Source: Rhodosorus marinus CCMP1338 (Eukaryota; Plantae; Rhodophyta). Taken from it: DNA of 64,000 nt. Below the pieces are notes generated by a model. That model saw only the letters and a list, made by a program, of their open reading frames with translations. It ran no database searches and had not been told where the DNA came from. This document shows positions 3,009-56,077 of this stretch, in pieces. The position numbers and the translations under genes were made by a program. The stretch spans positions 496,001-560,000 of the forward strand of contig JAMWBK010000006.1 in assembly GCA_029953675.1 (NCBI GenBank). Reading direction: 5' to 3'. Numbering within the stretch: position 1 is the first letter of the stretch; each line of letters begins with the position of its first letter.

Positions 3009-5306
3009 GTGCAGACCTCTTTTTTCTTTTTTTTTCAGTTGCTGAAGACTTTCACTCTGGCGGCGCGGGAGAGTGAAGATGATGAACAAAACGGGGAGAA
3101 AATATCAGAGTTGGAGGGTAAGGCTCAAGGCCCCCGGAAACATCTGGAAGCAGAGAGCTCGTTGGCGGTCTCTAAAACGCTTGAGAGAGTGAAGCTTAAG
3201 AAACGGCAGAAGGAGGAGAGGCTTAGGAGGGCGGGGAAAGAGCTTCCCAATCCCTCCCATGGGGAGGACAGTGACAACCTCCAGTGGATAGCTGCTGATG
3301 ATGACCTCGAGTGGGTAGATGCTGATGATAATCCCGGCGAGGTAGAAGACAGATCTATTGACAGGCCCGGTAACCTTGAATCTGGAGTAGATGAGATTGA
3401 AGTGGTTTATAGTGACGGACCGGAGACCAAAACGACTTCTGTAGAGAAGGGGGATGGATACGATGAGGGGTGTGAGTCTGTTGTGAGAGATTTACAGGCA
3501 GGAGTACTACCACATGAACAAATCAGTGAAGAAAAGCAGCCCTTGCTCTCAGAGGACGACGATGAGATAATTGTTGACCTCGGAACGCCAAATAATTCTG
3601 AGGGCGGTGCTGATGAGACGGAGCCCAAACCTAAGCGCGCGAGAGTGAGCGCTGAGGAGAAACGCTACTACTTGAGCATACATAGTGCCCATCTGACGGT
3701 GCTAGTTTGCCTGATTCCTGGAAAAGCAGACCAGGTGGCCTCGGATGCGACCCTGCAAGAAACTGCTTCAAGCTTGTTAGCAACTGGAGAAATAAGCGAC
3801 ATTCCGTCCTTGCGTCGTTCAGTAATTCTGTTCTGTGCAAATATTGCACAAGCGGCGAGAGGACTATCGGTCAAGAGTGCAGACCTCAGAGAGAGGGCCA
3901 AGCTTTTGGTTCAGAGGAAAATCGGCGGGCCCCTGGAAGCCATGGTTGTCTTGGCGGCGGCGCTCCGTTGGAAGGGTCTTCGCACCAGAACCGTGGCCTC
4001 TTTAATTCCCGTGTCGCATAGACACAGTGTGGTGAACCAGAGCGTGGACGCCAACACAGAACACTGGTGCGAAGTATTCTTGAGCGGTCGATGGATCCCC
4101 GCGAGCGCAGTAAACGGATCTGTCGACAAAGTGCAATCCATGTTCGCCAAAACTGGAACTCCGAAGAGAAGGGGACCGGCTGCCAGTAGCGAGCGGAAGA
4201 GGTCCGCTTTACACACACATGTCATTGCGTGCGAACGTGGACGCTACTACGATGTTACCCCGAGGTACAACAAGGAATGGCACAAGGTTCAAGCGCATCG
4301 GGCTCCGGATAATCTTCTGGGGGAGCTTCTAAAGCGTCTATCGGTGACCCGCACTCTCGAAAGCCCCGACTCAGGCTCTGAGGCAGATAAGGTGGAGCTG
4401 GAGGGGATCGCTCTAAGCGAGCCATTGCCTACTTCTCAGGCAGCGTATGTAAACCATCCGCGTTTCGCTCTAGAGAAACATTTGCTTAAGTTTGAAATCC
4501 TCCATCCGAAAGAGCCAGTATTGGGATACTGTTCTGGTTTACCAGTCTATCCAAGGCGATGCGTTCACACACTTCGATCTAAAGAGAGATGGATTCGAGA
4601 AATGCGAATAGTTCGAGATGATGCTGAACCAGTGAAACTCATGGCTGCAAGGAAAGGTTCTTCTCGTGAAGGCCAGCAGATAGAGCTCTTCGGGTTTTGG
4701 CAGACTAATAAGTACGTGCCTCCTTTCGCGTTTGACGGCATCGTGCCCAAGGATGAAAACAACAAGCTGGACATATGGACTCCGGAGCACGTTCCAGGCG
4801 GCTGCGTACATGTAAAGATGAAGTACGCGGCGCAGATGGCTCGACGGTTGCAAATAGATTACGCGGTTGCTATGACGGGATTTGACGTAAGGCCAGGCGG
4901 AAAATCCGTCCCAAAGTTTGAAGGTGTCGTAGTCCTGGAGGAGAACAAAGAACTGCTCGAAGATGCCGCTCGCGCTGGAATGGGAATGAAAATAGAAGCT
5001 GACGCCCGAAAAGAGTACGACCAACTGATTAGCCTGTGGCGAAAGGTTATTCGAGCAGTCCGAGCAAAGGAAAAGGTTCGAAGGAAGTACGGAGGTGCCC
5101 TGGAGCATGATCTGACATATCTCCAGTCCAAGAGACTTGGAGTCGAGCAGAAGCTACTGGAACCGGAAGGTCCTTCGGCTTCTGTCGAGAATAGAGCTCA
5201 CATACATGAGTATCTTCCCGCGGTGGCGGATCGGAACAAGCCGTGGGAGTTTGTTGAGATCTGCAAGACATGTGGGGTGAAACATCGATTCTCAAAGCTT
5301 TGCTGA
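3009..5306 (+). CDS. XPC: DNA damage recognition protein XPC/RAD4 (5' end uncertain; likely splice acceptor at ~3038)
   Basis: 765-aa ORF with the transglutaminase-like motif HWCEVF...RWIP, YDVTPRY, BHD-region EPLPTSQAAYVNHPRFALEKHLLKFE, ELFGFWQT..Y.PP...DGIVPK and AMTGFD...VPKFEGVVV. The N-terminus is acidic and low-complexity. Confidence 0.92.
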   Translation: MQTSFFFFFQLLKTFTLAARESEDDEQNGEKISELEGKAQGPRKHLEAESSLAVSKTLERVKLKKRQKEERLRRAGKELPNPSHGEDSDNLQWIAADDDLEWVDADDNPGEVEDRSIDRPGNLESGVDEIEVVYSDGPETKTTSVEKGDGYDEGCESVVRDLQAGVLPHEQISEEKQPLLSEDDDEIIVDLGTPNNSEGGADETEPKPKRARVSAEEKRYYLSIHSAHLTVLVCLIPGKADQVASDATLQETASSLLATGEISDIPSLRRSVILFCANIAQAARGLSVKSADLRERAKLLVQRKIGGPLEAMVVLAAALRWKGLRTRTVASLIPVSHRHSVVNQSVDANTEHWCEVFLSGRWIPASAVNGSVDKVQSMFAKTGTPKRRGPAASSERKRSALHTHVIACERGRYYDVTPRYNKEWHKVQAHRAPDNLLGELLKRLSVTRTLESPDSGSEADKVELEGIALSEPLPTSQAAYVNHPRFALEKHLLKFEILHPKEPVLGYCSGLPVYPRRCVHTLRSKERWIREMRIVRDDAEPVKLMAARKGSSREGQQIELFGFWQTNKYVPPFAFDGIVPKDENNKLDIWTPEHVPGGCVHVKMKYAAQMARRLQIDYAVAMTGFDVRPGGKSVPKFEGVVVLEENKELLEDAARAGMGMKIEADARKEYDQLISLWRKVIRAVRAKEKVRRKYGGALEHDLTYLQSKRLGVEQKLLEPEGPSASVENRAHIHEYLPAVADRNKPWEFVEICKTCGVKHRFSKLC

Positions 5307-9997: not shown

Positions 9998-12900
9998 ATG
10001 ACCGCTTATGGGGACCGAGTTATGGCCTGGGGCTCCTGTGAAAGTGGGCAGCTAGGAGCTTGCGGTGAGGAGGAGGAGGTTGTTTCCAACCCTCGACATG
10101 TCCCAGGATTTGGTTCAGATGTTGCGGTGCTGACATGTGGGCCGTGGGGAACTGTCTCGGTAGGAGATTCTCCGAATGAGGTCTATACTTCTGGAGAGAG
10201 AGGCAAGCCTGTTGCTACCGTTAGTGGATTGGAATCAGCGGCGAGGGTTGTAGGTGCCGGCCGCGGCGAGGATTTTCTGGTTGTTCTGACGGAGGACTCG
10301 AAAATTCTCACTCTAGGAGGATCGGCGTATGGACAACTGGGTAGAGGGGATAATGTTGTAGAATCGACATCACTGCGCTCTGTCAAGTGGCCTAGAAGCA
10401 GTAGAGACATTGTGAAGATTCGCGCTGGTGCTTACCATTGGTTGGCTATGTCAAGCACTGGAAAAGTTTTCGGCAGTGGATCGAATTCGAAGGGCCAATT
10501 GGGAATACCCGAGAGAAGGTCTATTCCTGAACCGGAAAGGATCTACAACTTGTGGGCATTTCCAGTTGTTGATATTGCAACGGGAGCGAACCATTCCGCG
10601 GTTCTAACAGCCCACGGGCACATATACACCTTTGGATCTAACCGATATGGTCAATTAGGCGTAAGAAGCGTGGGAGAGCAGTCAAATGATGCTGGAGGAG
10701 AGACAAGCATAGCTTCCCCCGGTGGCTCTATCCAGGTGAAGGATTTTTCCGAGTACCCGCATCGGGTCCCGTGCCCAGACGGACTACACTACAAGGCCGT
10801 CGCATGCGGGGCTGACCACACGTTGGCCATACGAAGCGATGGAAAACTTGTGACATTTGGGAAAGGGACCTCGGGACAGCTTGGGTGCGGTTCCACGGGA
10901 AGCAGCTCTAATCCAATGGTTGTCCGACTGCCATCAGACGAAGTGTTTGTATCTGTAGTAGGTGGTGGAAGGCACAGTGCTTGTTTGAGTTTAGCCGGTA
11001 ATTTGTACACTTGGGGAGCTGGCGAAAGTGGACAACTTGGAAACATGGACGTTTCCGACAAACTATATCCCGTCAAAGTTGAAAAGCCCAAAAAAGGCAG
11101 AAAACGCTCGAGGGGCTCGGCCTCCATGGATCCAGATGGATGTGGCATGTCTACAAGTGAAGATCAACTTGCTAACGTGACTGACGGGATTCACGAGGAG
11201 AGCTTTTGGACGATGGTAGCTTGTGGTGCGAATCATACGGTTGCTACTCTATCGAATTCGTTGGATCGAATCGAGGCTATGAAGGAGAACCTGGAATGCA
11301 GAGCAAACACAATAGCAACGGTAAGCGGTTCCCAAGCATTTGGATGCGCCGGATACCTGTCGAAGGAGTTCATACGCTATGGTGCTGGTGAGCTTGAGCT
11401 GGATGCTGAAAGAGCAGCAGCTGAGTATTCGAAGTTCCTAGATGATTTTGACGGGAACGGGCCCCAAGCATTGGAGGAGGCTGCTTTGTATTTGGCTGTT
11501 GATAGCAAGGACGCGTTTGCTCGCGGGTGGGATTGTAGCGGTCAGCTTGTGTCTGTTTCAAGCGTCGCAAACCAAATCGAACCTGCAATGGTATTGCTGC
11601 TAGCTATGTTGAATCCATCTCTGACATCAGAGAACGGGCTGAGGTATCTCGGATTCTTAGTTGAAATGGCCAAGTATTTGCGAATACGTGGAAAGAGGAG
11701 TTTTATCCACGCTGTGTCAAATGACATTCCAACTAACATGTTAATAACAAGACTAATTACGCCAATTCAGATGCTCATTGATATGGAGCTGAGGACTGAG
11801 CGAGCGATCACCGAGACTGTCATCAACAGTGTAAAGACACTCTACCTGCTGTTCTGCGCTGTGAAAGCTAGAGGGCCCGGTCATGAGCCTATATCCTTAA
11901 AAGAGTTCTACAATTCGACCATAACCCAGGAGGTGAATCTAAGTCGAGACTATGAAAGAAAGTTTTTGCTTGAGGGCGAGAAATCGTTCTCTTTTTGCAG
12001 CTATCCATTCATTCTTGACCAGGAAGCCAAGGGCATCCTGCTGAGGAAGGAAATGAAGAGCGTTCAGCATAAGTGCGCAATGGACTCCCTGATGTCTCCT
12101 AACCGCATGATGTCACCGAACTGCGAGATAGAAGTGAGAAGAGATCATTTGATTCAAGATTCGTTATCGGAGCTACTGCGCCGACACCAGTTCCCGATGG
12201 AACTCAGGAAACCGCTTAAGGTTCGTTTCGTGGGAGAGGCTGGTGAGGATGCCGGAGGTCTGCGGAAGGAGTTCTTCCAGATAGCTATTGAAAAGTTGTT
12301 TTCACCGGACTTCGGAATGTTCACGTACGACGAAGAGAATCGTTATCACTGGTTCCGTTGTGACTCGCTGGAAGCCAACGACGCGTTCAATTTGGTGGGG
12401 ACTCTAGTTGGACTGGCCATTTACAACGATACTATCCTTGACCTCCACTTTCCACCTGTAGTATACAAGAAGCTGCAGGACCTAGCGCCAAACTTCGAAG
12501 ACCTCAAGGTTATGTCTCCGAGAGTCGCCCAATCTCTTCAGGCGGTACTTGACTACGATGGAGACGACTTGGAGGACGTGCTGTGCGTCACTTTCACTGT
12601 CCCGTATGAGTCTATTTATGGCGAGCGCGTGGAGCACGAGCTCGTCGAAGGAGGGAAAGATCGGTTTGTGACCCAGGAGAACAAGCATGAATTCGTCCGC
12701 CTCTACACAGAGTGGGTAATGGAAAAGTCCGTGGATAAGGCTTTTGGGGCATTCAAGGGAGGAATGCGAAGAATGATCCCCGGACATATGCTCAACCTAT
12801 TTGAGCCTGAGGAATTCGAAGTGCTTGTTTGCGGGGAAAAGTTCGACGACGTGGGCCAGTTGGAGAAGCACACCAGATATGACGGGGGCTACACCCAGAA

Positions 12901-13274
12901 CTCCGAGGTGATTACTTGGTTTTGGGAGGTTCTGAATGGCCTGAGCCCGGACAGAAAAAGAAGCTTCCTAGCCTTTGTTACGGGGACCGACAGAGTTCCG
13001 GCCGGTGGAGTTGAGAAGCTGAACTTTGTGATTCAGCGTTCGGGTAAGTGTTTCTGCATACAATGTGGTCAGGGCAATGCTCGTCCGCGCTCAGCAGCAA
13101 CAAGCCATCTAATTACGGAGCAACTTTTCCGCCGCAGGTCCCGATTCAGATCGTTTACCAACATCACACACGTGCTTCAACGTGTTGCTCCTTCCTGAAT
13201 ACAGCTCACTGGAGAAGACAAAGAACCGTCTTCTGCTATCGATAGAAAACTCGCAAGGGTTTGGGCTTCGCTAG
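9998..13274 (+). CDS. RCC1-repeat plus HECT E3 ubiquitin ligase (HERC-like), 2 exons
   Basis: RCC1 repeats ([40 protein letters not shown]) then a HECT domain ([36 protein letters not shown]). Intron 13044-13137 leads to [22 protein letters not shown]...GFGLR* with the catalytic Cys, stop at 13272-13274. Confidence 0.93.
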
Positions 13275-13712
13275 CTGAGCTGACAGTTAAGGCTATACCG
13301 CCCAGTGAGGTGTGCTCGCTACTGGGGCTACCGTCTTGTGCGGGAACTTGTTTTACTACCCCGAAAACTTGCAAAACTGTAGATGTAACATGAACATATA
13401 GCTCTTGTTCGCAACTAGCTAATACATACTTACTAATCTAAAATTTGATTTACTGCGTTTGTCGCTTATCAATTTCCATCCATCACAGTCAGAGCCGCTA
13501 GCACGGGGGTTCTGGGTGGCCTTCGGGAACAAGTTTTTTTGGGCCAGAAATACTCAACGCGGTAAGGACAAGGCTCAGGTCTCGGATATAGCTTGTCCAA
13601 TGTCCTTCCGTAGTTAGCCAGTTCGTTATTTGCCCGTTTTGGACCTGGATCTTCACTCTGGACTGCTTTTCATTGATCCGGTTCTCGGGATGTGGGGCTG
13701 CTTCTGTAGATT

Positions 13713-15466
13713 CTACTCCTCATCGTCAGTTAGTTCCGATTCATCGTCAGTTTCTCCCTCAGTCTTCGTATGCCGAAGCTGTTCTATAATATGCCGTCCC
13801 TTGCGCGAGACCCTCTCTATCTCCTCCAAGTTGTCAACGTCCAGTCCATAAACCTCGGTAACGAGCCCATTCATTTTTTCTCGGATGGCGAGATACTGCT
13901 CAAACTTTCTATAGAGAGAAAGTTTGCCTGAATTGAAAAGGACGTAGAATCAACGTAAGACAGAGAAGGTGAGCAACCCAAGGAGAAACCTTTGATACGG
14001 AATCCGAAGTAGCTCGTAGGCTTTCCCCGCAAGCTGGTTTGAGGAGCACTATACTCTGCGAGCAACTCAAACTTGAACCAAAATTTAACGGTTGCCCGTC
14101 ATACCTGATTGCTCTATATCACTCAGGGCAGGGACTCGCCCCTCTCGTTCCTTGAAATCGTCTGAGAATCGTTTCAGTTCCTTCCGCAGCTGAATGAATG
14201 TGTGAATGTCATTGTTTTCCATTAGCCGGTATTGGCCAATAAGGCGGTAATCGCTCTTGGTCAAACCCCTCCGACCGCTTTCCTCAGATTCAGACTCATC
14301 CTCAAATATCTCGTCTTCACCGATCGCCTGTACGATTCCATCAGGGGACGACCTCTCAACACGAACGGCATCCTTCTGCAGACGAGGACTAGCCACCGGG
14401 ACCTCTTCGGGATCCACGCTCCCTGAGAAGTTGAAAGCAATTTCCAACCCCCTTCTTAGCAGCTTGCAGTATCACCCGTTCTTTTCGGATGAAAATTCTG
14501 ACCGCCGCTTACCGTAAACATCTTTCGCTAATCCTCTGATACGATCGCGAATTCTCAGATACCGTTCGAACTTGGAGGCCACTTCATTGGAAGCTATTCT
14601 CCTTACATCAGTGATGCTTGGGCGGCGCCCAATCCGATCTGCAAACTCATCCGACCACACTCTAAGATCCCGACGTAGAGACACGAATTCGTGGATGTGA
14701 TCTGTATCAACCTGAGCAGCACAATCAGTGAAACGGAAACGAGCCCGTTCAGAATATGCCAAGAAGGGACTATTCTGGTACTAGCTGTGGAGATTGCACT
14801 TTTGAAAGACCTAGAGTGGAGAATATTCCAGCTGAAGCTTACCAAGGCAAAGTTTCCCTCCTTATCATCAACGTCCTTGCTCCGTGAGCTGACAACGACA
14901 TCATCCCCGGGACGCCTCCTCGCCATTCTCAGCTTCTTTCTTGTGTCCTCGGAGACTTTTCTACCCGCCATCTTCTCAGATATCTTTCGACGATGTGCAC
15001 TGGACAAACGTCGCCCTTTGTTCCAGGGCGTCCTCCCGAACTGTGATTTCGACATCTTCGTCCGCGTTTCCGAGTCTAGCTTCTTCCCCTTGTTCCACGG
15101 AACTTTACCTCGATGAGCTTCTGAAAGCTTGCTCTTCATAGCTTCTGACTTCTTCTTCCCCAACATCGAAGCAGATATCCTCGCCTTGGTCTCTTCCGTT
15201 AAGCTTCGACGTCGCGTGCGTTCCTCCTCGCTTTTGGCCGTCCGAACTCCAGGATCCTCCACCGCTCTTTTTTCCTCCTTGTCTGCATTCGGAGCCATCC
15301 ATCTCTCGCCCTCTCCAAACTTCCCATCGCCAATCAAACTTACTTGCTCGGACAAGTGTATTGTAACAACCTTTCGTGAACAAGTAAGCTCGTTTCTTCT
15401 CCAATAAGCTGTATTCCCAAGCCTTCTATCGCCACACGCAAAACTCACAAACCCAAGCAGTGCCAT
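13713..15466 (-). CDS. Putative plastid DNA-binding protein: transit peptide, ~5 NUMOD3 motifs, two Sld2/RecQL4-N-like modules; 4 exons
   Basis: ATG at 15466 (MALLGFVSFACG). NUMOD3-like units such as LTEETKARISASMLG and KKLDSETRTKMSKSQFGRTPWNKG. Three GT-AG introns (about 14842-14712, 14513-14425, 14101-13926) join exons coding two homologous ~70-aa units (LRRDLRVWSDEF...GRRPS..DV and LRKELKRFSDDF...GRVP..SDI). Acidic tail, stop at 13713-13715. Confidence 0.8.
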
Positions 15467-16894
15467 GCTCGCCCATCTAAACTCCACACACTGCCCAGCT
15501 CGCTCTGCGTGCCAAGTCTCAATCCTGCTCTTCACAACAACTCCCTTCAACCCCGCCAGCCCTTACAAACCGCAGAAACCTCCACTAAACACAAAAGGTA
15601 CCCATCACATCCTCTTCCGTTCCGTACCAAAAATAAACACAACGAGCTCACAAACCCAGCAGACCTCTTGACCGCGCAATCGAAACCTCGTCTTCTTCAC
15701 ACCGTCTCATAAAAGCATATCAAGACACCAATACAAAAAGCACGCTCTCCCTCAACACCTAAACGCCCTCGTCCGCCCTCAAACCAAATCCAGCAACGCG
15801 GACACCCACCCAACTGCTTCACTCCTCTCGCCCAGAAAAACTTCTACCCAAACAAAAGCAAAACACGTCTGCTAACAAAAAAAAAAAACACAACCAAACT
15901 CAGGTGAAGTCACCAAATCTCACATCCGTTTCCAAGACCTGGCCCGGAGATCTCCTCCAAAAAAAAACAACAAAAAACCTTCCGCCTCCTCCCCACCAAA
16001 ATACAAAACTTCCAGCTCAAAGCTTTGCACAAACACAAAACAGAACACTCCTTCCTCTGACTGCTTCAAAACTTCTACCACAATGACAACCCACAGCCAT
16101 GAGCTAGCGCTTTATCACAGTCTACCTCTTACTAACTTCACTCCTTTCTTTCCCTCTCGCCTATGTTATCTCACCCCCAAACCTTCAATCCCCTCAAAAG
16201 CCGAAGAAGAAGAAGAAGAAGCTCCTGCACCTGGCAGTCAAAAACTTGTGTAGGTAAACGAAATGCCTTTACCTCCAAACGAAAATCTGGCGAGGAAGAC
16301 GAACACGAAGTAAAGAGATTTCACTCTCAGCCAACCGCACGATTCCGATTCCCCCTGTATTAGATGATATCCTCAAAAACAATGGTTTCTTACGAGGAGT
16401 TTTCGAGATCTCATTGAATATTTGAAGTTTTTGTCGTATGAGCTGAGGATCGTAGGTTTTCGGGATCTTCGTTGAGCTGGAGATGGTGGGAGAGAGATAT
16501 TGTAACAAGATACCTCGATGTGATGGACTTTCATAAAGTGGGGAGTTGTTGTTGGATGTAGAGTGATGAGGAAGAGGACGGATCAAGGTCTTCTGTTGGA
16601 CTTTAGAAAAATAAATTTCTGGCGGTTTGTTTTTGGGGGAGGACCTCCATCTGTGGGTTTGTGTTCGGGCGATCGTGTTCTGCACGGATTTCCAGTTATC
16701 GCTCTCGGACGGGCTAGGATGTTATAGGTCGATTCGAAGTTCGAGTTTTGAGTGTCCTGGTTGCTTTCTTACTTGGTGTTCGCAAGCTTTTCTCGCCCGC
16801 CTCCTTTCATATGCAGAGCAACGTCCTGACCTTATTGAGCTTGGATGCTACGAGTTGGGCCTTGGCTCTTGGGTGAGGATCGCTGCGGTGGGTT

Positions 16895-48284: not shown

Positions 48285-51200
48285 TTAGTTCAGGAATAGA
48301 CGACAATTAGAAGCTCCACAATTGCACGGCAGTTTTGCTTCCTCGTCATCAAAGTTGAATTTGTAGTCATAGGTTAGCTCCTCATCGACCCTGATGACCC
48401 GCTTCGTTGTGATAACAATAGCCCGACGCCCGTCGACTTTGATAGTCCTCGAGTAGCAATTCGGGTCGCACGAGTGGTTGATGAACCTCGCATAGTTGCC
48501 AGTCATTGTCGCGTCAACAATTTGATCGTCATCCAAGCGGAACATGTAGCATCCAATCCCTTTGCTGTCATAGTACGCTTCGCGCCCGTCCGACAAGGAC
48601 GGTCGAATGATCTCCCCGCAATACTCAATCACCATCTCTTCTGGAGTAAACTCTCTCATTGCATAAAGGCCAAGCCCTTGTATGCCACTCATTCTGATCT
48701 GCGTCTTTACCTTCCATTTTCGCAGCATGGACTTGTGCTGCAGTGAATCCTCAATTTCACTCTTCCGCCGGACGTTTTGAGCTTCCCCATCCTCTTCCTC
48801 GTCATCAACCTTAGCCTGCAGGGACACAACCGAGAACCATATCAGAACCAAATTCCGGAGGTGAACACAATCACAAGCGAAACGTCTTAGCCCTACCTCA
48901 GGATCTGCGCTCGCCACAACAGAGCTCTTACTCAACTGCAGACCGCTCGAAATTCCCTCCGTTCGGACACAGCCGCTGACGTTGTAGCCAAACGCACGCC
49001 CAGTAGGCTGAAAATACTGGAATTCATACTCTCTTGCATGTGTCGCTTCTGGCAACAGCTCCAGAATCGAACGGACAGATGGCAGGGACAGTCCAAACGC
49101 GCGAAGTGCATCTGATCGAGGAACTCGAGCACACAGGTCCGGAGCGTACCATGTGGGGTCAAGCCCGCTGAATAACTCTTTCCGAGAGGAATTCACTCGA
49201 TTGAGCACCTGCGACATGAAAAGGGCAAAGGAGAAAGCTGAGGATTCGCAAAGGTGCAGCTCTAAGGTGATTCCCGTTATCAAGAAGGGTGAGAAATTGT
49301 CCTACCTCCCCCCATGCAGCAGCTGGTGTTCGTTGTACGATTCTAAAGTCGTCGTCTTCACACTGAACGCAGAATATAGGCCCGGACTGGTCATCCCCCA
49401 CGACAGATAAGAAGTACAGGCATCGGGTGAAGGGTGACTTTACACTAAAAAATCGTCGAACTGCTTTATACCCGATTGGGTAGAGCACCTCTTTCTCCTG
49501 ATAAATCGACAGGTACGGGATGATTTGCCCAGTAGCGACTAGAGCATATGCACCACACCGAACCGACTCCACCGTATCATTCCGACCTCGGATCCCAGGC
49601 GGGGTCATATCTGCCTGAAGACGCTTTCGTACTTCACGTACTGAGAGCCCAACACTGCATCCGCGCTGCTCAGCATGCTCAGCACAAAGGAGGAGCTTGT
49701 ATCCCGCTTTTCCATATTTGTGAATACATTTAGTTTTCAACGAGCAGCTCAAGTGGTAGTTATGCTTACAAAGGCGGCTGGCACACCCCACACTGGCCCC
49801 AGATTTCTTGCAGTAGAAGCATTTCAATCCTCGCGCCCGAAAGACCGCAGAAGTAACGTGACAGAGCAGAGCAGGTGTTGAAGGCTCTTCATAGACCTCC
49901 GAGCTCCAGAGCGCGCACATCACATGCACCCACAAACCGTTCCCGACAGGTATAAACCGACCGGCAACTTCAGTTTCTTCTTCAGATCGGCATAATTCAC
50001 ACTGACGAGTTGATTTTTTGATGTCAAGACCCCAGGTCGAAATCGGTTCAAGGCCCAAATCGAAGTCCAGCGACTCCTCGCTAAGGTCGGACTCATCCAT
50101 TGGAATGTCCTGTGTGGTCCGGTCTTCTTCAACCACTTTCACGACGGAGACAGCCTCCGCGTCCTTCCCACCAGGAGCAGAGTTTCTTGCTTTGGCAGTA
50201 CCCTCATTTCGTCCGTGCTCAGGAACGGCCGAATCCGCTCCAGATCCGTCATGGACCTCGTCTCTACAAGAGAAACACAAGTATTTCTTGCCAAGACTCT
50301 TGGCCACAAACTCTTCGTCACATGACTGATGGATTAGCGAATGACACTCGCCACATTTCAAAACCGCTCGTCCTCGAGGAGGACCCGTGCACTTTCTGCA
50401 TGAGATCCACTTTTCTCTTGTGCTCCAGCATCTTTCACACGATAGCACTGAATGATCTTGCATCTCGCCGTCTAATGAATAGCCTCCAATCCGGCGAGAG
50501 ACGCCTGTCGGTCCTGCAAAACGTTCAGGTCGAGAGTGACAAATTTCACATGTCCTGCACTCCCTACAGCGCATAGCTCCACTGCCGCTTCGGAGGCTTC
50601 CCAATTTGTCGTCTTCCGCTATGCACTCGATATGGAACCTCTTCTCACATGAGGTGCATTTGACGCAATGAGTGGTTTCCCTATTCGAACAGTAAGGACA
50701 ACTAGAGCACCATTCACAAAACCAAGCTGGCGCGTCACTGGCCAACATTCCCGCCCGAACTCGCGAGTAAGCAGTTCGAAGCATCTCTGGTTCGGGGATT
50801 TCCGATTCTCCAAGCGATGCTTTGCGCCCTTGCAAGCAGAACGTGTGGAAACCATCGCCACAGGAAGCGCAGAATCGCATTGGCGATGAACCTGATGAAC
50901 ATCCGCAGACCAAGCACAACTCTGCATCCAATGCTAGTCTTGAAAACATTTGCCTAGACTTGATTGTAACCTCAGTGGTCTCCGGCAACTCTTGGCCTCT
51001 CTTTTGTGGTTCCTCGAGTTTCTTCTCCTCCTCCTTCTCTTCTACGCCTGAATTCTCATCCGAAAGCGACTCGTGCTCGTCTGGAGCAGTGATCAGCGTC
51101 TTCCTCTTTCGGTTCATGATGTTATCGTTTTCCATGAAACTCGAGAGCTCCTCCATCACAAAAGCCTTTCCGCGGCCTGCGCGCCGGTTGCCGCTCTTCA

Positions 51201-54200
51201 CATCCTTAAGCCGCTCTTTTAATAGTCCTCTGCTCTTCCTGACCTTAGTCCTCGTGCAGATTGTGCAATACCATTTCTTTAGAGAGTCCTGACCCATTCG
51301 TTCCAGTTCACCTTCTGCAATTCCTTCGCAAGCAATGTGCACCCATTTCTCACATCCATCGCATACGACCATGTCGAGGTCTTCTGCCCTGTACGCTTTA
51401 TCACAAACAGGGCAAAAGTCGCCATGGTAGTATCCCTTGCGGCATTCTGCGCAAAACCCATCGTCGGCAACTTTTCCTTTCGTATCAGTACGCTCGCAGT
51501 GGTCACATATATTACAAATGTCGCACTTAAAGCCCCCAGGAAAGTCCGCAGTCTTGTTCTCTTTCGACTCTGTAGCAGCCGGTTTCAGGCACTCGGCGTG
51601 GAAACCACGCTTGCACTTCGCGCATCTTATAGAAACACATTTCGATTCCATACCCTCCTTCTCGGAACAGATCACGCAACAATCGCAGCGCGGACAAGTC
51701 CACCCATCCGGGATTGACATGGTGATCAGAGGAGGGTCTATGCACAAAGCATGCGAACTGCTGTGACACTTAGTGCACTCAAGAAGCGGACCGCGTCGGG
51801 TTTCAATATCATCATCTTCGCATATTTTGCAATGAGCCACATCCTCAATCCCCTCTTGACCCCCTTTCCGAATCGGCAGGAATAATCCCTTGCTTAGAGT
51901 TCTGTCTAGCTCGCTGTGCTCGGGACAAAACGTTTCGAATGTAGCTGTGAACGCTGCCCCGTTGTATACTCCGCAAGCAAAGTGGAACGGTTGACAACAA
52001 GCTGTCTTCATGTGCATACACGACATGGATGCTCCAGGCTTTCCACAAACGATGCAAATCAGCTCCGAGAACTGTCCTATGGCCTTGTCCAGACCTCCAA
52101 ATACTTGTGGGCCTTCGCTCTCGGTGACCCCGGGGCACCACAACGCGCAATTCCGATGTACGTAGACTTCTTCGTCCTCCGCAATTTCAATAGGGCCTTC
52201 CAGAATTCCTTGACACGCAACGCGATCTCCGCTCTCGCAGCAGAACACACAAACAGCTTCTGCCCCAACGCCTGACAGAACTTCCAGCGGAGTCCACGCT
52301 TTCAATTTTTCGGCTCGGAGGTCCCCTGTTGCTGTCCTTGGTCCGTCCATCTGATCAGCATTCAACACCTTCTCGAGTGACTCAATTGATGGCTTAAACT
52401 TTCTCTTAGTCTCAGCCGAGGCTGCCGAAGGAGGGGAGTCGCCTAAGCTCTTCGATGTTAAACCTAGTACTTTTGGAGGTTTTCCCGGCGAAGCGTGTGG
52501 GCCGAATTTTCGCTTGGTAGTAGACGTGGCCCAATTCTTCTTTTTCATAATTTTAGCCCTTGAAGCCGAACGAAGGCGACCTTTCTCGCCTTTGGTTCTC
52601 CCTCTTTTTGAATTCTCCGATTGCTTCAAATCTGTAACTGCCACTTCAGACTTCATTTCGCCTTTAGTGTGCAGTCCAGTTGTCTCCTTCGGGCGCTTCA
52701 AGTCTCTGACTGTAACCTCAGATTTTCTCTCGCCTTTTGTGTGCGGTTCTGTTGTCTTCTTCGGGCGCTTCAAACCTGTGACCGCAACCTCAGACTTCAT
52801 CTGGCCTTTAACGCGTGGTCCTGTTGTCTTCTTCGGGCGCTTCAAGTCTCTGACTGCAACCTCAGACTTTGTCTCGCCTTTACCCGGCGGTATTGTTGTC
52901 TTTACCGCGTGCTTCAAGTCCGTGGCCTTAACCCCAGGCTTCATCTCGCCTTCAGCGTGCGGTCCTGTTGTCTTCGCCGGATGCCATAAATCTGTGCTGA
53001 TGACCTTAGACTTGGTTTCGCCTACAGTTCTCGGTCTTTTGGTATTCTCGGCGTGCTTCAGGTCTCTCGCCTCAGACTTCGTCTTGTCCTTAGTTCTCGG
53101 TCTTCTCGTCTTCCCCGAGTGCTTCAAATCTGGCACTGTGGCCTCAGACTTAACCTCGCCTTCAGTTCGGGGTCTTGTTGTCTCCCTTGAATGCTTTGAA
53201 TCTGTGCCTGTGACCTCAGACTTCAAATTTATCAAAAGATCATCGGTTGCCTTCTCCGCATGGACCGGCTCTGGGGAAATGGCAACAGTCGGGAAATCTA
53301 GAGCTGTAAGGTCCTTCCTTTGTACCTTCTCAGTTGGTGGTATACTACAACGGAAGCGCCTTGCCAGTTTTGTGGATCCACCCAAGGAAGTTTCCGTACT
53401 CTTCAATCCTTCGGGATCTTCCGTACTCTTCGATCCTTCGGAATCTTCAGCACTTTTCAGTCTTTCAGACTTTTCCCTATTCTCGGGTTCTTTGGAATTT
53501 TCCCTACTCTTCAATCCCTCGCGAACGGGTTTGGCAGGTGGAATAACCCAGCCTTCCGCCTCCACAACTTCGGTCTCCATTTCGCCAGAGGCGACTTCCT
53601 GTTTTCTTTTCGTCTTCTTCAAATTCGCCAAATTGAGCCCGTTCACGAGAGGTGCCTTCTTCGCAAGCTGCTCCTGCGGTTTAACCCAACCAAGCGTCAC
53701 CTCCTTTGAATGTGATTCAATGCCGCGTAAGTGCAGTTTTGTTTGTACATGTTTTGTGTTCGACTGCATACGACGTGCTTGTCCTTTGGTTTCCTTAGAA
53801 GCTTTCTTCCCAGCCCCAATATGGTGTTTCAGAGCCTGGCTCTTACTAGCGTTCAAACCTTTCGTGTTCATGTCACGTTCGTCTTGTCCTCGCTGAGTGC
53901 TGCTTCTGCTCTTTCGGTTCAGAGGCTTCTTCTTGATCTGTGGAAGCATATCGTCACTAGAGCTACTTTGTGGTAGATCCCCATTACTCCCAGGCGATTC
54001 ACCGAGCCGCGAGTTCTTCTGAATACCAAGTTCAACTCTCCGACGTCTTGGCAGTCTACAGTCCACTGCTGGAGGCTCAGACCCTGCAACCACATCCGCC
54101 CTACGTCCAGGATCTTTACCATTAACAGCTAAGGATGGACCGCGGGGGACACAAGGAACACCAATTTCTTGCAGCCCTCCGACGGCGGCAACTGTTCCTT

Positions 54201-54513
54201 TTGAAGGACCAAGCTCATTGACTAGTCTTCCACTGTTCCCCTGCTTGGTACCTTCCCTGTGTTTAGGGCTGCGATGGCCAGCAATCTTGGAGCTTAAATA
54301 ATCTTGCCCGGGTGACATCGGCCCGTTGCGATTTGGTCTGGTCGCGTACTTTGTCCCGCGGTCTCCATCCAAATCGTTGTCTTTCGAGCCGACCCTGTCG
54401 AAAAAATCTTCTTCAGTTCCAGGCATTCTGTCATTTACAGGCTTGACCCGTTTCCTAAGTAACAGAACCCCCCGATATCCTCCGCTCTGGGACCAGTTCT
54501 CCTCATCTTCCAT
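48285..54513 (-). CDS. Trithorax/MLL-like H3K4 methyltransferase (ePHD, multiple PHD, ePHD, FYRN, FYRC, SET, post-SET), 3 exons
   Basis: A long ORF with many C4HC3 fingers (e.g. CPVCDKAY...MVVCDGCEKWVHIACE) and ePHD motifs (VHRNCALWCPGV, VHVMCALWSSEV). FYRN: LYPIGYKAVRRFFS. SET: SGIQGLGLYA...MVIEYCGE...YMFRLD...ARFINHSCDPNC...ELTYDY. Post-SET: CNCGASNCR. Introns 49305-49209 and 48896-48816. First in-frame ATG is 54513; the true start may lie upstream. Confidence 0.93.
52581..53225 (-). repeat. Coding tandem repeat, 9 copies of a 72-nt / 24-aa unit inside the SET gene
   Basis: The translated units align as KSEV(A/T)VxDLKxxxxTTxPxTKGEx; one copy is 22 aa. Confidence 0.92.
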
Positions 54514-56077
54514 CAAGGGTAACCCTTCGTAGGCGTCCTTTTCGCCTGCCAAACCTTCGCATTACCGCTTCTAATCCTTCTATACATCAGTAGATAGCTT
54601 AAATTCCTCCAAGCTCTCGAACTCTCGTTTCCAGGCCCTCCCATTCCTACCTCCCTTCCCAATACCGGAATCCCCATAAACCAAAGCTTCCACTTTTCTC
54701 GTCATCCCGACAATCTGCAAGTAAGGAACCCCCAGTCGGACAAAACAAAAGTTGTCCCAAACAGATTATCAAATCCAAGGAAAAAAAATTACATAAATAC
54801 TCAATCCAACCGCTCCGTGTCCCCCGTGGACACATCAGAGAATTTTCGCTTAGCAGATGAACTATTTTAAGATCGTACTGCCATCAAAATATCTTCGAAA
54901 TCTTAATCTAGCTCTTCCTTTAACCCCTAGGATGTTCTGACTACAAAAAAATATTCTTCTGAAAAACAAAATAAATTACGTATTAATCGTTTGATGAAGA
55001 AGACTATAAGGGCTGGATCTTCTTTGAGGTACGAAGGTATTATGACAATTCTGTACTATAATTTAGATTATTTTGGGGAGGGTTAGTTTTGCGCGGGAAT
55101 TATGCGGCGTGTGGTAACTGGAGGTAATGCAAATGGCGGGTCTGGGTAAGGGATGGTTGAGCAGCTGAGATTAGACTCTTGAAGTACGAAAGGTGGGTCT
55201 GATTCGAGACGATGGAAGGATTCCTGATCTGTACGGCCCCAGAGAGATCAGAATATTCTACTGTTTCAATCGTTCACTGGGGTGCGCTCCAACTCACCCG
55301 CGGTGTGAGCAGATCACAGAGACTGGAGATAGATCCTCACCGAATCGAAACAACACCGTGCCTTGGGGTCTGAGCTCTCTTGTCTGACTGAAAAGTCCTC
55401 GTACATATGCACGCGGCTGACGAGAAGGGGATTGTTCTGGTCTGCTGTTGCTAGAGAGAGAATCACACCCTTGGAAAAAACGACGTTGTTGTCTGCATAT
55501 CGGACTCCGCTTGCCGAAATCCAAAAAATAGAGCAACGAGATTGTTCACCCTGGGACCAATATATTCAGAACACCATAGCCACCGTAGGCGTCGGTCCGT
55601 TCCTGGATATACGCCTACTCACCCCCAGCTACTTGCCCAGAGAAAATCCTAAACGAAGCCTTTCTTGCATTGACCTCTTGCATGTTCATGAGCGTCTGTC
55701 AGAGAGATAGCCTCAGCGGTCCAGAGTTTTCAACAGGGAATTGTGCTCTACATGATAGCAGAAAAACACATCAAAAGCATTGGAAGGCAACCAGCAGCTT
55801 ACTATTGTTAAGGTCGCATGATCCTCAAAGCTTCTGACCAGGTTCCGAAAATACAGTCAATTTCAATGGGGTCAATCAATTTTCAGTCTTTCAGGTGCTT
55901 TTTTTGAAAGACAAGTGTTGTACTTTCCCCGAAAATGACTGAATCTCTGCAACACGCTTTTGAGGACGGATAGATCGGAGAGGTGTTTAGTGATGGAGGA
56001 GATCCTTTGTTGTGTTAAGGACACCGGGGTTAATGAGGGTGAAGCGAACCGAACTGGAGTAGAAAGCAAGAATCAAA

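What the first reader, a model, noticed from the sequence alone, without database searches (positions are those of the whole stretch)
13713..15466. Plastid-targeted protein fusing homing-endonuclease NUMOD3 motifs to two Sld2/RecQL4-N-like DNA-binding modules
Seen in sequence: after splicing 3 introns the protein has a red-algal-type transit peptide and ~5 tandem NUMOD3-like motifs (about 15207-14915). I see no GIY-YIG or HNH nuclease motif. Two ~70-aa homologous units follow: DHIHEFVSLRRDLRVWSDEFADRIGRRPSITDVRRIASNEVASKFERYLRIRDRIRGLAKDVYG and NDIHTFIQLRKELKRFSDDFKEREGRVPALSDIEQSGKLSLYREFEQYLAIREKMNGLVTEVYG. Established: NUMOD3 is a DNA-binding motif from intron homing endonucleases, and the RecQL4/Sld2 N-terminal homeodomain-like module has the pattern L..W...F....GRRPS..DV......Y..Y..L (FAM13 C-termini share it). 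Inference: a chimera of a domesticated mobile-element motif and a nuclear replication-initiation-type module, imported into plastids, may be an undescribed nucleoid or organellar replication/expression factor. The ORF track hides it by splitting it over 4 ORFs.
Basis: partly seen in the sequence, partly recalled or inferred. Interest (0 to 1): 0.72.

Follow-up and report, generated by a model that had tools for sequence, protein, structure and literature searches.

The report
Nuclease-free algal NUMOD3 plus Sld2-like protein
This red-alga gene encodes an uncharacterised protein, with relatives in red, green and glaucophyte algae, that joins DNA-binding motifs borrowed from intron homing endonucleases to two small helical domains like the tip of the replication factor Sld2/RecQL4; it has no nuclease part and its cellular address is unproven.

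Summary
On the minus strand, four exons (15466-14843, 14711-14513, 14422-14105, 13927-13713) give a 451-aa protein. It is identical to GenBank KAJ8903897.1 (Rhodosorus marinus, 'hypothetical protein'). A 92%-identical MMETSP transcript joins the same three junctions.

Pfam finds NUMOD3 (E 5.9e-15) and no nuclease domain. The AlphaFold2 model shows five short helices in the NUMOD3 region. Two ~85-aa units are 39% identical (E 4e-22) and occur in all ~30 red-algal homologues checked.

The units resemble the N-terminal three-helix domain of Sld2/RecQL4:
- 29 of 33 units hit Pfam Drc1-Sld2 positions 3-47.
- The best PDB sequence hit is 2KMU (E 0.003).
- hhalign gives 97.5% to repeats that score 1e-63 on that Pfam model.
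- The aromatic core residues are kept.
- Foldseek gave nothing significant.

The architecture is not unique to this genome. NUMOD3 plus one or two units occurs in Cyanidioschyzon (CMK009C), Galdieria, Cyanophora, Coccomyxa, Pyramimonas and Chlorokybus. I found no functional literature.

Plastid targeting is plausible: an 85-residue disordered presequence with Phe at positions 6 and 9. It is untested, and florideophyte orthologues carry an NLS-like KRPR motif.

Most likely this is a non-catalytic, multi-module DNA-binding protein, perhaps in the plastid nucleoid.

The parts
13713..15466 (-). Whole coding region (ATG 15466 to stop TAG 13715-13713), 4 exons, 451 aa
   Evidence: Product is 100% identical to GenBank KAJ8903897.1.
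14843..15466 (-). Exon 1 (aa 1-208): presequence-like N-terminus, NUMOD3 array, RMARRRPGD motif, start of unit 1
14712..14842 (-). Intron 1 (131 nt, GTAAGC..CTCAG). It is retained in MMETSP isoform P0003.
14513..14711 (-). Exon 2 (aa 209-275): three-helix core of unit 1
14423..14512 (-). Intron 2 (90 nt, GTAAGC..CTCAG)
   Evidence: The junction is confirmed by transcript P0001.
14105..14422 (-). Exon 3 (aa 275-381): disordered acidic linker and first half of unit 2
13928..14104 (-). Intron 3 (177 nt, GTATGA..TTCAG). It interrupts unit 2 between helix 2 and helix 3.
   Evidence: The junction is confirmed by transcript P0001.
13713..13927 (-). Exon 4 (aa 381-451 plus stop): helix 3 of unit 2, C-terminal helix, acidic tail
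15212..15466 (-). N-terminal 85 residues. No conserved domain, pLDDT below 50, Phe at positions 6 and 9, net basic start. Candidate organelle presequence.
   Evidence: This is inference, not a tested localisation.
14912..15205 (-). NUMOD3 array, aa 88-185: five short basic helices (91-101, 108-118, 132-142, 156-166, 173-182)
   Evidence: Pfam PF07460 E 5.9e-15. AF2 helices. Best PDB sequence hit is the I-TevI DNA-binding domain 1I3J, E 0.085.
14903..14929 (-). RMARRRPGD motif (aa 180-188), nearly invariant across red-algal orthologues
14514..14705 (-). Unit 1 core (aa 211-274): Sld2/RecQL4-N-like three-helix domain, pLDDT about 91
13815..14249 (-). Unit 2 (aa 333-418, spans intron 3): second Sld2/RecQL4-N-like domain, preceded by the conserved YRLIGxYRLME helix
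13749..13829 (-). C-terminal conserved helix (aa 414-440, VDNLEEIERVSRKGRHIIEQLR), followed by an acidic tail

Best explanation
The gene encodes a nucleus-encoded, catalytically inert, modular DNA-binding protein. It belongs to an uncharacterised family found in red, green and glaucophyte algae.

Shown:
- An 85-residue disordered N-terminus.
- Five NUMOD3 helices, the DNA-contacting motif of GIY-YIG/HNH homing endonucleases such as I-TevI, with no nuclease domain.
- A conserved RMARRRPGD motif.
- Two copies of an ~85-residue helical unit. Its core is a long helix, a GRxP(S/T) loop, a one-turn helix and a long helix, and it is homologous to the N-terminal homeodomain-like domain of Sld2/RecQL4.
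- A disordered acidic linker between the units, and a C-terminal helix.

Inferred mechanism: the NUMOD3 array lies along DNA, as it does in I-TevI. Each Sld2-N-type unit adds a low-specificity DNA contact that prefers branched DNA, or alternatively a partner-docking contact, as shown for RecQL4 residues 1-54. Three DNA-binding blocks on flexible linkers would let the protein coat, bridge or mark DNA rather than cut it.

Inferred location: the presequence-like N-terminus, with Phe near the start, suggests import into the plastid. So does the day-phased expression of the Cyanidioschyzon orthologue. There the protein would act as a nucleoid-associated DNA maintenance or expression factor. This localisation step is the weakest link.
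For: Gene model and expression.

NUMOD3 is significant and no nuclease domain is present. The model shows five helices. I-TevI 1I3J is the best PDB sequence hit, though weak (E 0.085).

The duplicated unit is real (39% identity, E 4e-22) and conserved in about 30 homologues.

Sld2-N similarity:
- Pfam PF11719 positions 3-47 are hit by 29 of 33 units, best E 5.4e-5.
- Homologues P0010, P0011 and P0022 score 28.1-30.6 bits, at or above the 28-bit cut-off.
- The best PDB sequence hit of the unit profile is 2KMU, the RecQL4 N-terminus, E 0.0032.
- The unit profile finds multi-repeat proteins at E 1e-30. These score 1e-63 to 1e-67 on PF11719. hhalign between the two sets gives 97.5% probability, E 5e-12, over all three helices.
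- The AF2 unit model has helices 12-36, 42-48 and 51-75. This matches the published RecQL4_N54 topology.
- The aromatic core W16/F20/Y44/Y47 aligns to conserved W(F)/F/F/Y.
- RecQL4_N54 binds DNA with a preference for branched DNA and binds TopBP1 (PMC3458545).

Family distribution with the same domain order (NUMOD3 then unit): Cyanidiococcus, Cyanidioschyzon CMK009C, Galdieria, Cyanophora, Coccomyxa, Pyramimonas and Chlorokybus.

N-termini: the first 40 residues of 50 family members average 1.9 acidic residues, against 4.5 per 40 in the whole proteins. Many start MAF.., MVFVSV.., MAAFAP...

Expression: CMK009C mRNA peaks at 4-8 h of light and is lowest at 16-20 h, when nuclear S/M genes peak.
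Against: - No localisation predictor or experiment was available.
- The window protein's own PF11719 score (21.5 bits) is below Pfam's cut-off.
- Foldseek against the PDB and BFVD gave no significant match. 2KMU was not in the top 50.
- Florideophyte orthologues have a conserved KRPR motif in the N-terminal region that fits a monopartite NLS.
- A Chlamydomonas protein annotated 'NUMOD3 motif' (Cre06.g287350, 71 aa) was predicted chloroplastic but was seen in the nucleus and nucleolus. Its orthology to this family is unproven.
- The Sld2-N-type module also occurs in proteins that are clearly not plastid DNA-binding factors, for example one fused to an ion-channel domain.
- The CMK009C expression amplitude is only about 2.3-fold, from one replicate sheet.
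- DNA binding itself was not measured.
Confidence: 0.5

Rival explanations
1. Same architecture, but the protein works in the nucleus. It would be a chromatin, transcription or DNA-repair factor, possibly dual-targeted. The N-terminal extension would be a disordered regulatory region rather than a transit peptide.
For: - A conserved KRPR (K-R-x-R type) motif sits in the otherwise unconserved N-termini of florideophyte orthologues, and RRQR sits in small one-unit paralogues.
- Cre06.g287350, annotated 'NUMOD3 motif', was seen in the nucleoplasm and nucleolus despite a chloroplast prediction.
- The known relatives of the unit, Sld2 and RecQL4, are nuclear.
- The window protein has 3 acidic residues in its first 40.
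Against: - The Rhodosorus protein itself lacks KRPR.
- Phe-containing MAF/MVF-type starts typical of red-algal and glaucophyte presequences recur across the family.
- All named members come from primary-plastid algae.
- The C. merolae orthologue is lowest when nuclear replication and mitosis genes peak.
- Cre06.g287350 is only 71 aa, so it is probably not the orthologue.
Confidence: 0.3
2. The whole DNA-binding region is a domesticated homing-endonuclease remnant. On this view the two units descend from the homing-endonuclease-associated HTH repeat (Pfam HNH_repeat, PF18780) or a KfrA_N-like HTH, not from an Sld2-type module. The Sld2 resemblance would then reflect only a shared ancient HTH superfamily.
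For: - The unit profile also detects a protein made of classic HNH_repeat units (P0174, E 3.5e-4) and a KfrA_N x7 protein (P0131, E 1.3e-6).
- hhalign gives 81.5% and 79.6% probability to these.
- There are weak Pfam HNH_repeat hits in P0001 and in one of 33 units.
- The top weak Foldseek hits are HTH domains, namely sigma factor and LexA.
- NUMOD3 is itself a homing-endonuclease motif.
Against: - Drc1-Sld2 is hit by 29 of 33 units, HNH_repeat by 1 of 33.
- hhalign to Sld2-type repeats is much stronger (97.5%, E 5e-12, 50 columns) than to HNH_repeat or KfrA_N (E about 1e-5).
- None of the NUMOD3 homing endonucleases recovered carried PF18780.
- The comparison targets were themselves picked by the unit profile, so all these probabilities are inflated.
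Confidence: 0.12
3. The two Sld2-N-type units are mainly protein-docking modules, as RecQL4 residues 1-54 dock TopBP1. The protein would then be an adaptor: NUMOD3 tethers it to DNA and the units recruit partner proteins.
For: - RecQL4_N54 is the minimal TopBP1-binding region.
- The units carry extra conserved elements beyond the three-helix core: YRLIGxYRLME, IRGLAxDVYG and the C-terminal helix.
- The module is repeated 7-12 times in giant proteins that are unlikely to be DNA-binding, one with an ion channel.
Against: - The same RecQL4 domain binds DNA through helix 3.
- No partner is known.
- This reading does not exclude DNA binding.
Confidence: 0.08

Closest known systems
I-TevI-type homing endonuclease DNA-binding region (NUMOD3 motif, Pfam PF07460; PDB 1I3J/1T2T)
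   Same: There is a significant PF07460 match (E 5.9e-15) with tandem short basic helices carrying the S-x-E-T/H-R/K-x-K-I/M-S and PWNKG signatures. The best PDB sequence hit of the array profile is the I-TevI DNA-binding domain.
   Different: There is no GIY-YIG, HNH or other catalytic domain. The gene is a nuclear gene with spliceosomal introns and conserved orthologues, not an ORF inside a group I intron. The five NUMOD3 helices are followed by unrelated helical units.
Sld2 / RecQL4 N-terminal homeodomain-like domain (Pfam Drc1-Sld2 PF11719 positions ~3-48; PDB 2KMU)
   Same: The signature L..W...F....GR.PS..DV......(F/Y)..Y is shared. So is the topology of long helix, six-residue loop, one-turn helix, long helix, and so is the aromatic core.
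   Different: Only the first ~45 of 416 profile positions match. There is no CDK-site/Dpb11-binding region and no RecQ helicase. The domain is internal and duplicated rather than N-terminal and single. The units are longer (~85 aa), with extra conserved flanks. Foldseek did not recover 2KMU.
Multi-repeat Sld2-N proteins of unidentified protists (P0075, P0076, P0079, P0080)
   Same: They carry the same module. They are found at E 1e-27 to 1e-30 by the algal unit profile, and hhalign gives 97.5%.
   Different: They have 7-12 repeats, no NUMOD3, MGQ-type N-termini, and in one case an ion-transport domain.
HNH_repeat (PF18780) and KfrA_N (PF11740) helix-turn-helix DNA-binding repeats
   Same: They share the helix, GRxPT and helix-turn-helix pattern. 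There are weak reciprocal profile hits.
   Different: The similarity is much weaker than to Sld2-N. The third-helix signature differs: FGSWN in HNH_repeat against KFExY in the algal units.
Green-algal and glaucophyte NUMOD3 + one-unit proteins (Coccomyxa KAK9908909.1, Chlorokybus, Pyramimonas, Cyanophora P0093) and cyanidiophyte orthologues (CMK009C, Gasu_04350, Cyanidiococcus KAF6002585.1)
   Same: The domain order is the same, NUMOD3 array then unit. hhalign between the red-algal and green/other unit profiles gives 99.6%.
   Different: Green and glaucophyte members have one unit and a different third-helix flank (TGIxWL..YKQY). Cyanidiophyte members have two units separated by a ~450-residue linker.

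Membership tests
NUMOD3-containing DNA-binding module (Pfam PF07460) | Profile match above Pfam's gathering score | tested here: met
   55.4 bits against a cut-off of 20.4, E 5.9e-15, 4 stretches
NUMOD3-containing DNA-binding module (Pfam PF07460) | Tandem short basic helices | tested here: met
   Five helices at 91-101, 108-118, 132-142, 156-166 and 173-182 in the AF2 model, with block-mean pLDDT about 54-82 across the array and residues 143-145 below 50
Homing endonuclease (GIY-YIG or HNH, intron- or intein-encoded) | A nuclease catalytic domain | tested here: not met
   No nuclease family at E<=10 in Pfam. All structured parts are accounted for by NUMOD3 and the two units.
Homing endonuclease (GIY-YIG or HNH, intron- or intein-encoded) | Encoded inside a self-splicing intron, intein or mobile element | tested here: not met
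   Nuclear gene with three GT-AG introns, spliced transcripts and orthologues in many algae
Sld2/RecQL4 N-terminal homeodomain-like domain (PF11719 N-terminus, 2KMU) | Sequence-profile similarity to the N-terminal ~45 positions | tested here: met
   The window protein alone scores 21.5 bits, below the 28-bit cut-off. At family level the feature is met: three homologues reach 28.1-30.6 bits; 29 of 33 units hit positions 3-47; 2KMU is the best PDB hit, E 0.0032; hhalign gives 97.5% to repeats scoring 1e-63 on PF11719.
Sld2/RecQL4 N-terminal homeodomain-like domain (PF11719 N-terminus, 2KMU) | Long helix 1, ~6-residue loop, one-turn helix 2, long helix 3 | tested here: met
   AF2 unit model: H12-36, loop 37-41 (GRxPS), H42-48, H51-75, pLDDT 78.7. 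In the full-length model the block-mean pLDDT over unit 1 (residues 211-260) is 84-93.
Sld2/RecQL4 N-terminal homeodomain-like domain (PF11719 N-terminus, 2KMU) | Stacked aromatic core (W16, F20, Y44, Y47 of RecQL4) | tested here: met
   In the HMM alignment these fall on unit columns W28 (F in window unit 2), F32, F57 and Y60. The last two are invariant.
Sld2/RecQL4 N-terminal homeodomain-like domain (PF11719 N-terminus, 2KMU) | Significant 3D similarity to 2KMU | tested here: inconclusive
   Foldseek against the PDB: best E 0.74 (sigma factor, LexA), and 2KMU is not in the top 50. Such small helical domains rarely reach significance.
Sld2 / RecQ4 orthologue (replication initiation factor) | Remainder of Sld2 (CDK sites, Dpb11/TopBP1 region) or a RecQ helicase domain | tested here: not met
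   Only profile positions 3-48 of 416 are matched, and there is no helicase domain
HNH_repeat (PF18780) / KfrA_N HTH repeats | Profile match | tested here: inconclusive
   1 of 33 units at E 0.021. hhalign gives about 80%, E 1e-5, to one protein of each type.
Red-algal plastid-targeted protein | N-terminal extension with Phe near the start and few acidic residues | tested here: inconclusive
   MALLGFVSFACG.. has F6 and F9. There are 3 acidic and 6 basic residues in the first 40. Residues 1-85 are disordered. The family mean is 1.9 acidic residues per 40 against 4.5 background. The KRPR motif in florideophytes points the other way.
Red-algal plastid-targeted protein | Predicted or observed plastid localisation | not testable with these tools
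   No TargetP-type predictor was available, and I found no localisation data for an orthologue.
   No FAM13 sequence was retrieved. Pfam PF26116, precomputed on several homologues, could not be named with the library at hand.

The most novel reading that the evidence does not exclude
Before red, green and glaucophyte algae diverged, the DNA-binding arm of a group I intron homing endonuclease lost its nuclease and moved to the nucleus. It fused to an Sld2-N-type helix-turn-helix module and became a conserved plastid nucleoid protein for DNA maintenance or replication. It still exists in algae, from Cyanidioschyzon to Chlorokybus, and has never been studied.
Probability: 0.25. Interest if true: 0.7.

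Novelty: new variant of a known kind. Interest (0 to 1): 0.5.

Why it matters
Plastid nucleoid and DNA-maintenance proteins of red algae are poorly known, and few components are shared by all three primary-plastid lineages. A conserved, nuclease-free protein built from a homing-endonuclease DNA-binding motif plus an Sld2/RecQL4-type domain would be a clear case of mobile-element domestication. It would also be a new handle on organelle (or nuclear) DNA organisation. The family has an orthologue (CMK009C) in the genetically tractable Cyanidioschyzon merolae, so the question can be tested directly. The work also shows that the Sld2-N module is a widely reused DNA- or protein-binding unit rather than a marker of replication initiation.

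Tried and rejected
- Foldseek of the unit model against the PDB and BFVD, and of the full-length model against the PDB: nothing at E<=0.001. The full-length model has pTM 0.29, so its matches mean nothing.
- phmmer of the whole protein against PDB sequences: no hit.
- A word-indexed search with a short profile of green-type units (A2): one hit only, uninformative.
- The search with the green-algal NUMOD3+unit profile (A3): many unnamed metagenome proteins and homing endonucleases, with no named Chlamydomonas or land-plant orthologue.
- Look-up of the neighbouring 1066-aa ORF to name the organism: not on record. The organism was identified through cluster members instead.
- Contig look-ups of two green-type homologues: anonymous metagenome scaffolds only.
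- Literature searches for NUMOD3 with chloroplast, alga, Arabidopsis, Chlamydomonas or nucleoid, for 'nuclease associated modular', and for CMK009C: no paper on this family.
- The bacterial promoter/terminator scan is irrelevant for a eukaryotic gene.
- tblastn of the protein against the window: no second copy.
- Pseudogene or mis-splice: rejected, because the transcript, the deposited annotation and conservation all agree.
- Active homing endonuclease: rejected, because there is no catalytic domain.
- Sld2 orthologue: rejected, because only the first ~45 profile positions match.
Full report
**What is in the sequence**

Reading the minus strand of 13300-15900 and joining four exons gives a 1356-nt reading frame of 451 codons. 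The exons are 15466-14843, 14711-14513, 14422-14105 and 13927-13713. The three introns are 131, 90 and 177 nt and all start GT and end AG. The mechanical ORF list does break the gene into four pieces.

The model is independently confirmed. An MMETSP transcript product (P0001, 447 aa, 92% identical) runs through all three junctions at exactly the modelled residues. A second transcript (P0003) is an intron-1-retained form. The 90%-identity cluster of P0001 contains GenBank KAJ8903897.1, 'hypothetical protein NDN08_000428 [Rhodosorus marinus]', 451 aa. This is 100% identical to my model. So the window is nuclear DNA of the red alga Rhodosorus marinus, and the gene is already deposited but unnamed.

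**Domain content**

Pfam gives NUMOD3 at E 5.9e-15 (55.4 bits, cut-off 20.4, four stretches). It finds nothing resembling a GIY-YIG, HNH or other nuclease even at E<=10.

An AlphaFold2 model made with 25 family members has these features:
- a disordered N-terminus (residues 1-85, pLDDT below 50);
- five short helices between 91 and 182, which are the NUMOD3 array;
- a confident helical unit at 211-274 (block-mean pLDDT 84-93);
- a disordered acidic linker at 283-324;
- a second helical unit at 330-406, plus a C-terminal helix at 414-440.

A profile of the NUMOD3 array finds the I-TevI DNA-binding domain (1I3J/1T2T) as its best PDB sequence match. The match is weak (E 0.085).

The two units are 39% identical without gaps (BLASTP E 4e-22). 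Both are present in every full-length red-algal homologue.

**Is the unit Sld2/RecQL4-like?**

Several lines agree.
- The window protein hits Pfam Drc1-Sld2 (PF11719) positions 3-47 at E 2e-4. That is below the curated cut-off (21.5 against 28 bits). Three florideophyte homologues reach 28.1-30.6 bits.
- 29 of 33 isolated units hit the same profile region.
- A profile of the units finds the NMR structure of the RecQL4 N-terminus (2KMU) as its best match among 177,635 PDB sequences (E 0.0032).
- An exhaustive HMM search of 1.84 billion representatives found 146 proteins at E<=1e-3. Among them are giant proteins with 7-12 copies of the module, found at E down to 1e-30. These score 1e-63 to 1e-67 on PF11719.
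- Local hhalign between the algal unit profile and those repeats gives 97.5% probability, E 5e-12, over 50 columns spanning all three helices.
- The predicted unit has helix 12-36, a GRxPS loop, a short helix 42-48 and helix 51-75. This matches the published description of RecQL4_N54: helix Glu4-Gln23, a six-residue loop, the one-turn helix Gln30-Val33, and helix Glu38-Thr54.
- The RecQL4 aromatic core W16/F20/Y44/Y47 (PMC3458545) aligns with conserved W(F)/F/F/Y columns of the units.

Against this, Foldseek recovered no significant structural neighbour. Its best weak hits were sigma-factor and LexA helix-turn-helix domains.

The module also grades into a wider helix-turn-helix group. The unit profile weakly finds a protein made of classic HNH_repeat units and one made of KfrA_N repeats. 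hhalign to these gives about 80%, E about 1e-5. These targets were selected by the same profile, so all these probabilities are optimistic, but the ranking is clear: Sld2-N first, then HNH_repeat and KfrA_N.

The protein is not an Sld2 or RecQ4 orthologue. Only the first ~45 of 416 profile positions match, and there is no helicase.

**Distribution**

The architecture is not peculiar to this genome. About 30 red-algal proteins have NUMOD3 plus two units, including ones from Gracilariopsis, Chondrus and Agarophyton.

Of 134 further representatives found with the unit profile, 10 have NUMOD3 plus two units and 29 have NUMOD3 plus one unit. NUMOD3 always comes first.

Named members:
- Cyanidiococcus KAF6002585.1;
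- Cyanidioschyzon merolae CMK009C;
- Galdieria sulphuraria Gasu_04350;
- the glaucophyte Cyanophora paradoxa;
- the green algae Coccomyxa subellipsoidea and Pyramimonas parkeae;
- the streptophyte alga Chlorokybus.

The red and green unit profiles match at 99.6% by hhalign.

PMC3458545 already remarked that Sld2-N-like sequences occur sporadically in green algae, oomycetes and dinoflagellates. I found no paper on NUMOD3 proteins of algae or on CMK009C.

**Where does it act?**

This is the weak point.

For plastid import:
- The first 85 residues are unconserved and disordered.
- The protein starts MALLGFVSFACG, with Phe at positions 6 and 9.
- Across 50 family members, the first 40 residues hold 1.9 acidic residues on average, against 4.5 per 40 in the whole proteins.
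- Many relatives start MAF.., MVFVSV.. or MAAFAP... From general knowledge, this fits the Phe-containing transit peptides of red algae and glaucophytes.
- In a published diel microarray, CMK009C reads 2749, 3949, 3505, 2831, 1711, 1821 and 2490 at 0-24 h. It peaks in the light and is lowest at 16-20 h, when nuclear S/M-phase genes peak. This speaks mildly against a nuclear replication-initiation role.

Against plastid import:
- Florideophyte orthologues share a KRPR motif in the N-terminal region that fits a nuclear localisation signal.
- A 71-aa Chlamydomonas protein annotated 'NUMOD3 motif' was predicted chloroplastic but observed in the nucleus and nucleolus. Its orthology is unproven.

No targeting predictor was available.

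**Most likely mechanism**

Shown: a nuclease-free protein with a NUMOD3 array and two Sld2-N-type three-helix domains on flexible linkers. It is conserved and expressed.

Inferred: the array and the units bind DNA. NUMOD3 would do so as in I-TevI. The units would do so as RecQL4_N54 does, without sequence specificity and with a preference for branched DNA. The protein would then coat, bridge or mark DNA, or tether partners to it.

I put this in the plastid nucleoid with roughly even odds. A nuclear or dual location is the main rival.

**Novelty and score**

Both building blocks are known. Their fusion in a non-catalytic eukaryotic protein family found in red, green and glaucophyte algae appears undescribed, so I call it a new variant of a known kind. 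It is a good candidate for study in C. merolae, but it is not a startling finding, and its function rests on inference. Interest: 0.5.

Noticed in passing
window 9998-13198 (+): An uninterrupted 1066-aa ORF with RCC1-like repeats in the N-terminal third and a HECT-like C-terminal end. It looks like a HERC-type E3 ubiquitin ligase. It converges on the 3' end of the NUMOD3 gene. An exact-sequence look-up found no record.
   Followed up: partly
window 14712-14842 (intron 1); proteins P0003, P0329, P0330: The MMETSP Rhodosorus transcriptome holds an intron-1-retained isoform. It would end after the NUMOD3 array (251 aa), giving a NUMOD3-only product. Two shorter isoforms of the same gene are also present.
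   Followed up: partly
homologues P0007, P0012-P0015, P0019, P0020, P0024, P0026, P0033, P0059-P0061 (N-termini): Florideophyte orthologues share a KRPR (or KRRR) motif close to an AF..P motif in otherwise unconserved N-termini. Small one-unit paralogues (P0089, P0099, P0115, P0123, P0126) have RRQR..AF. This could be a nuclear localisation signal, a feature of the lineage's presequences, or a dual-targeting signal.
   Followed up: partly
proteins P0075, P0076, P0079, P0080, P0083, P0084, P0087: These are giant proteins of unidentified eukaryotes with 7-12 Sld2-N-type repeats (Pfam Drc1-Sld2 E 1e-63 to 1e-67). Six of the seven start MGQ/MGG/MGS, which looks like an N-myristoylation signal; P0087 starts MSTPEE. 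P0087 combines nine repeats with an ion-transport channel domain.
   Followed up: partly
proteins P0131 and P0174: P0131 consists of seven KfrA_N-type repeats. P0174 consists of four classic HNH_repeat units. Both are weakly found by the algal unit profile, so the GRxPT three-helix module links Sld2-N, HNH_repeat and KfrA_N into one helix-turn-helix group.
   Followed up: partly
alignment A4 columns ~575-690 (florideophyte homologues): Between the two units, florideophyte proteins have extra conserved motifs (NNN..V.VTKHGN.RLV and DMWDMYDRP). These are absent from the Rhodosorus protein. Their function is unknown.
   Followed up: no
window 49159-54552 (-) and 3009-5306 (+): Two further long ORFs of 1797 aa and 765 aa lie elsewhere in the window. 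I did not examine them.
   Followed up: no
homologues (P0001, P0010, P0011, P0014, P0015, P0021): The precomputed annotation lists Pfam PF26116.1 on several homologues. That accession is absent from the Pfam copy available here, so its name and extent are unknown. It may already describe this unit.
   Followed up: no
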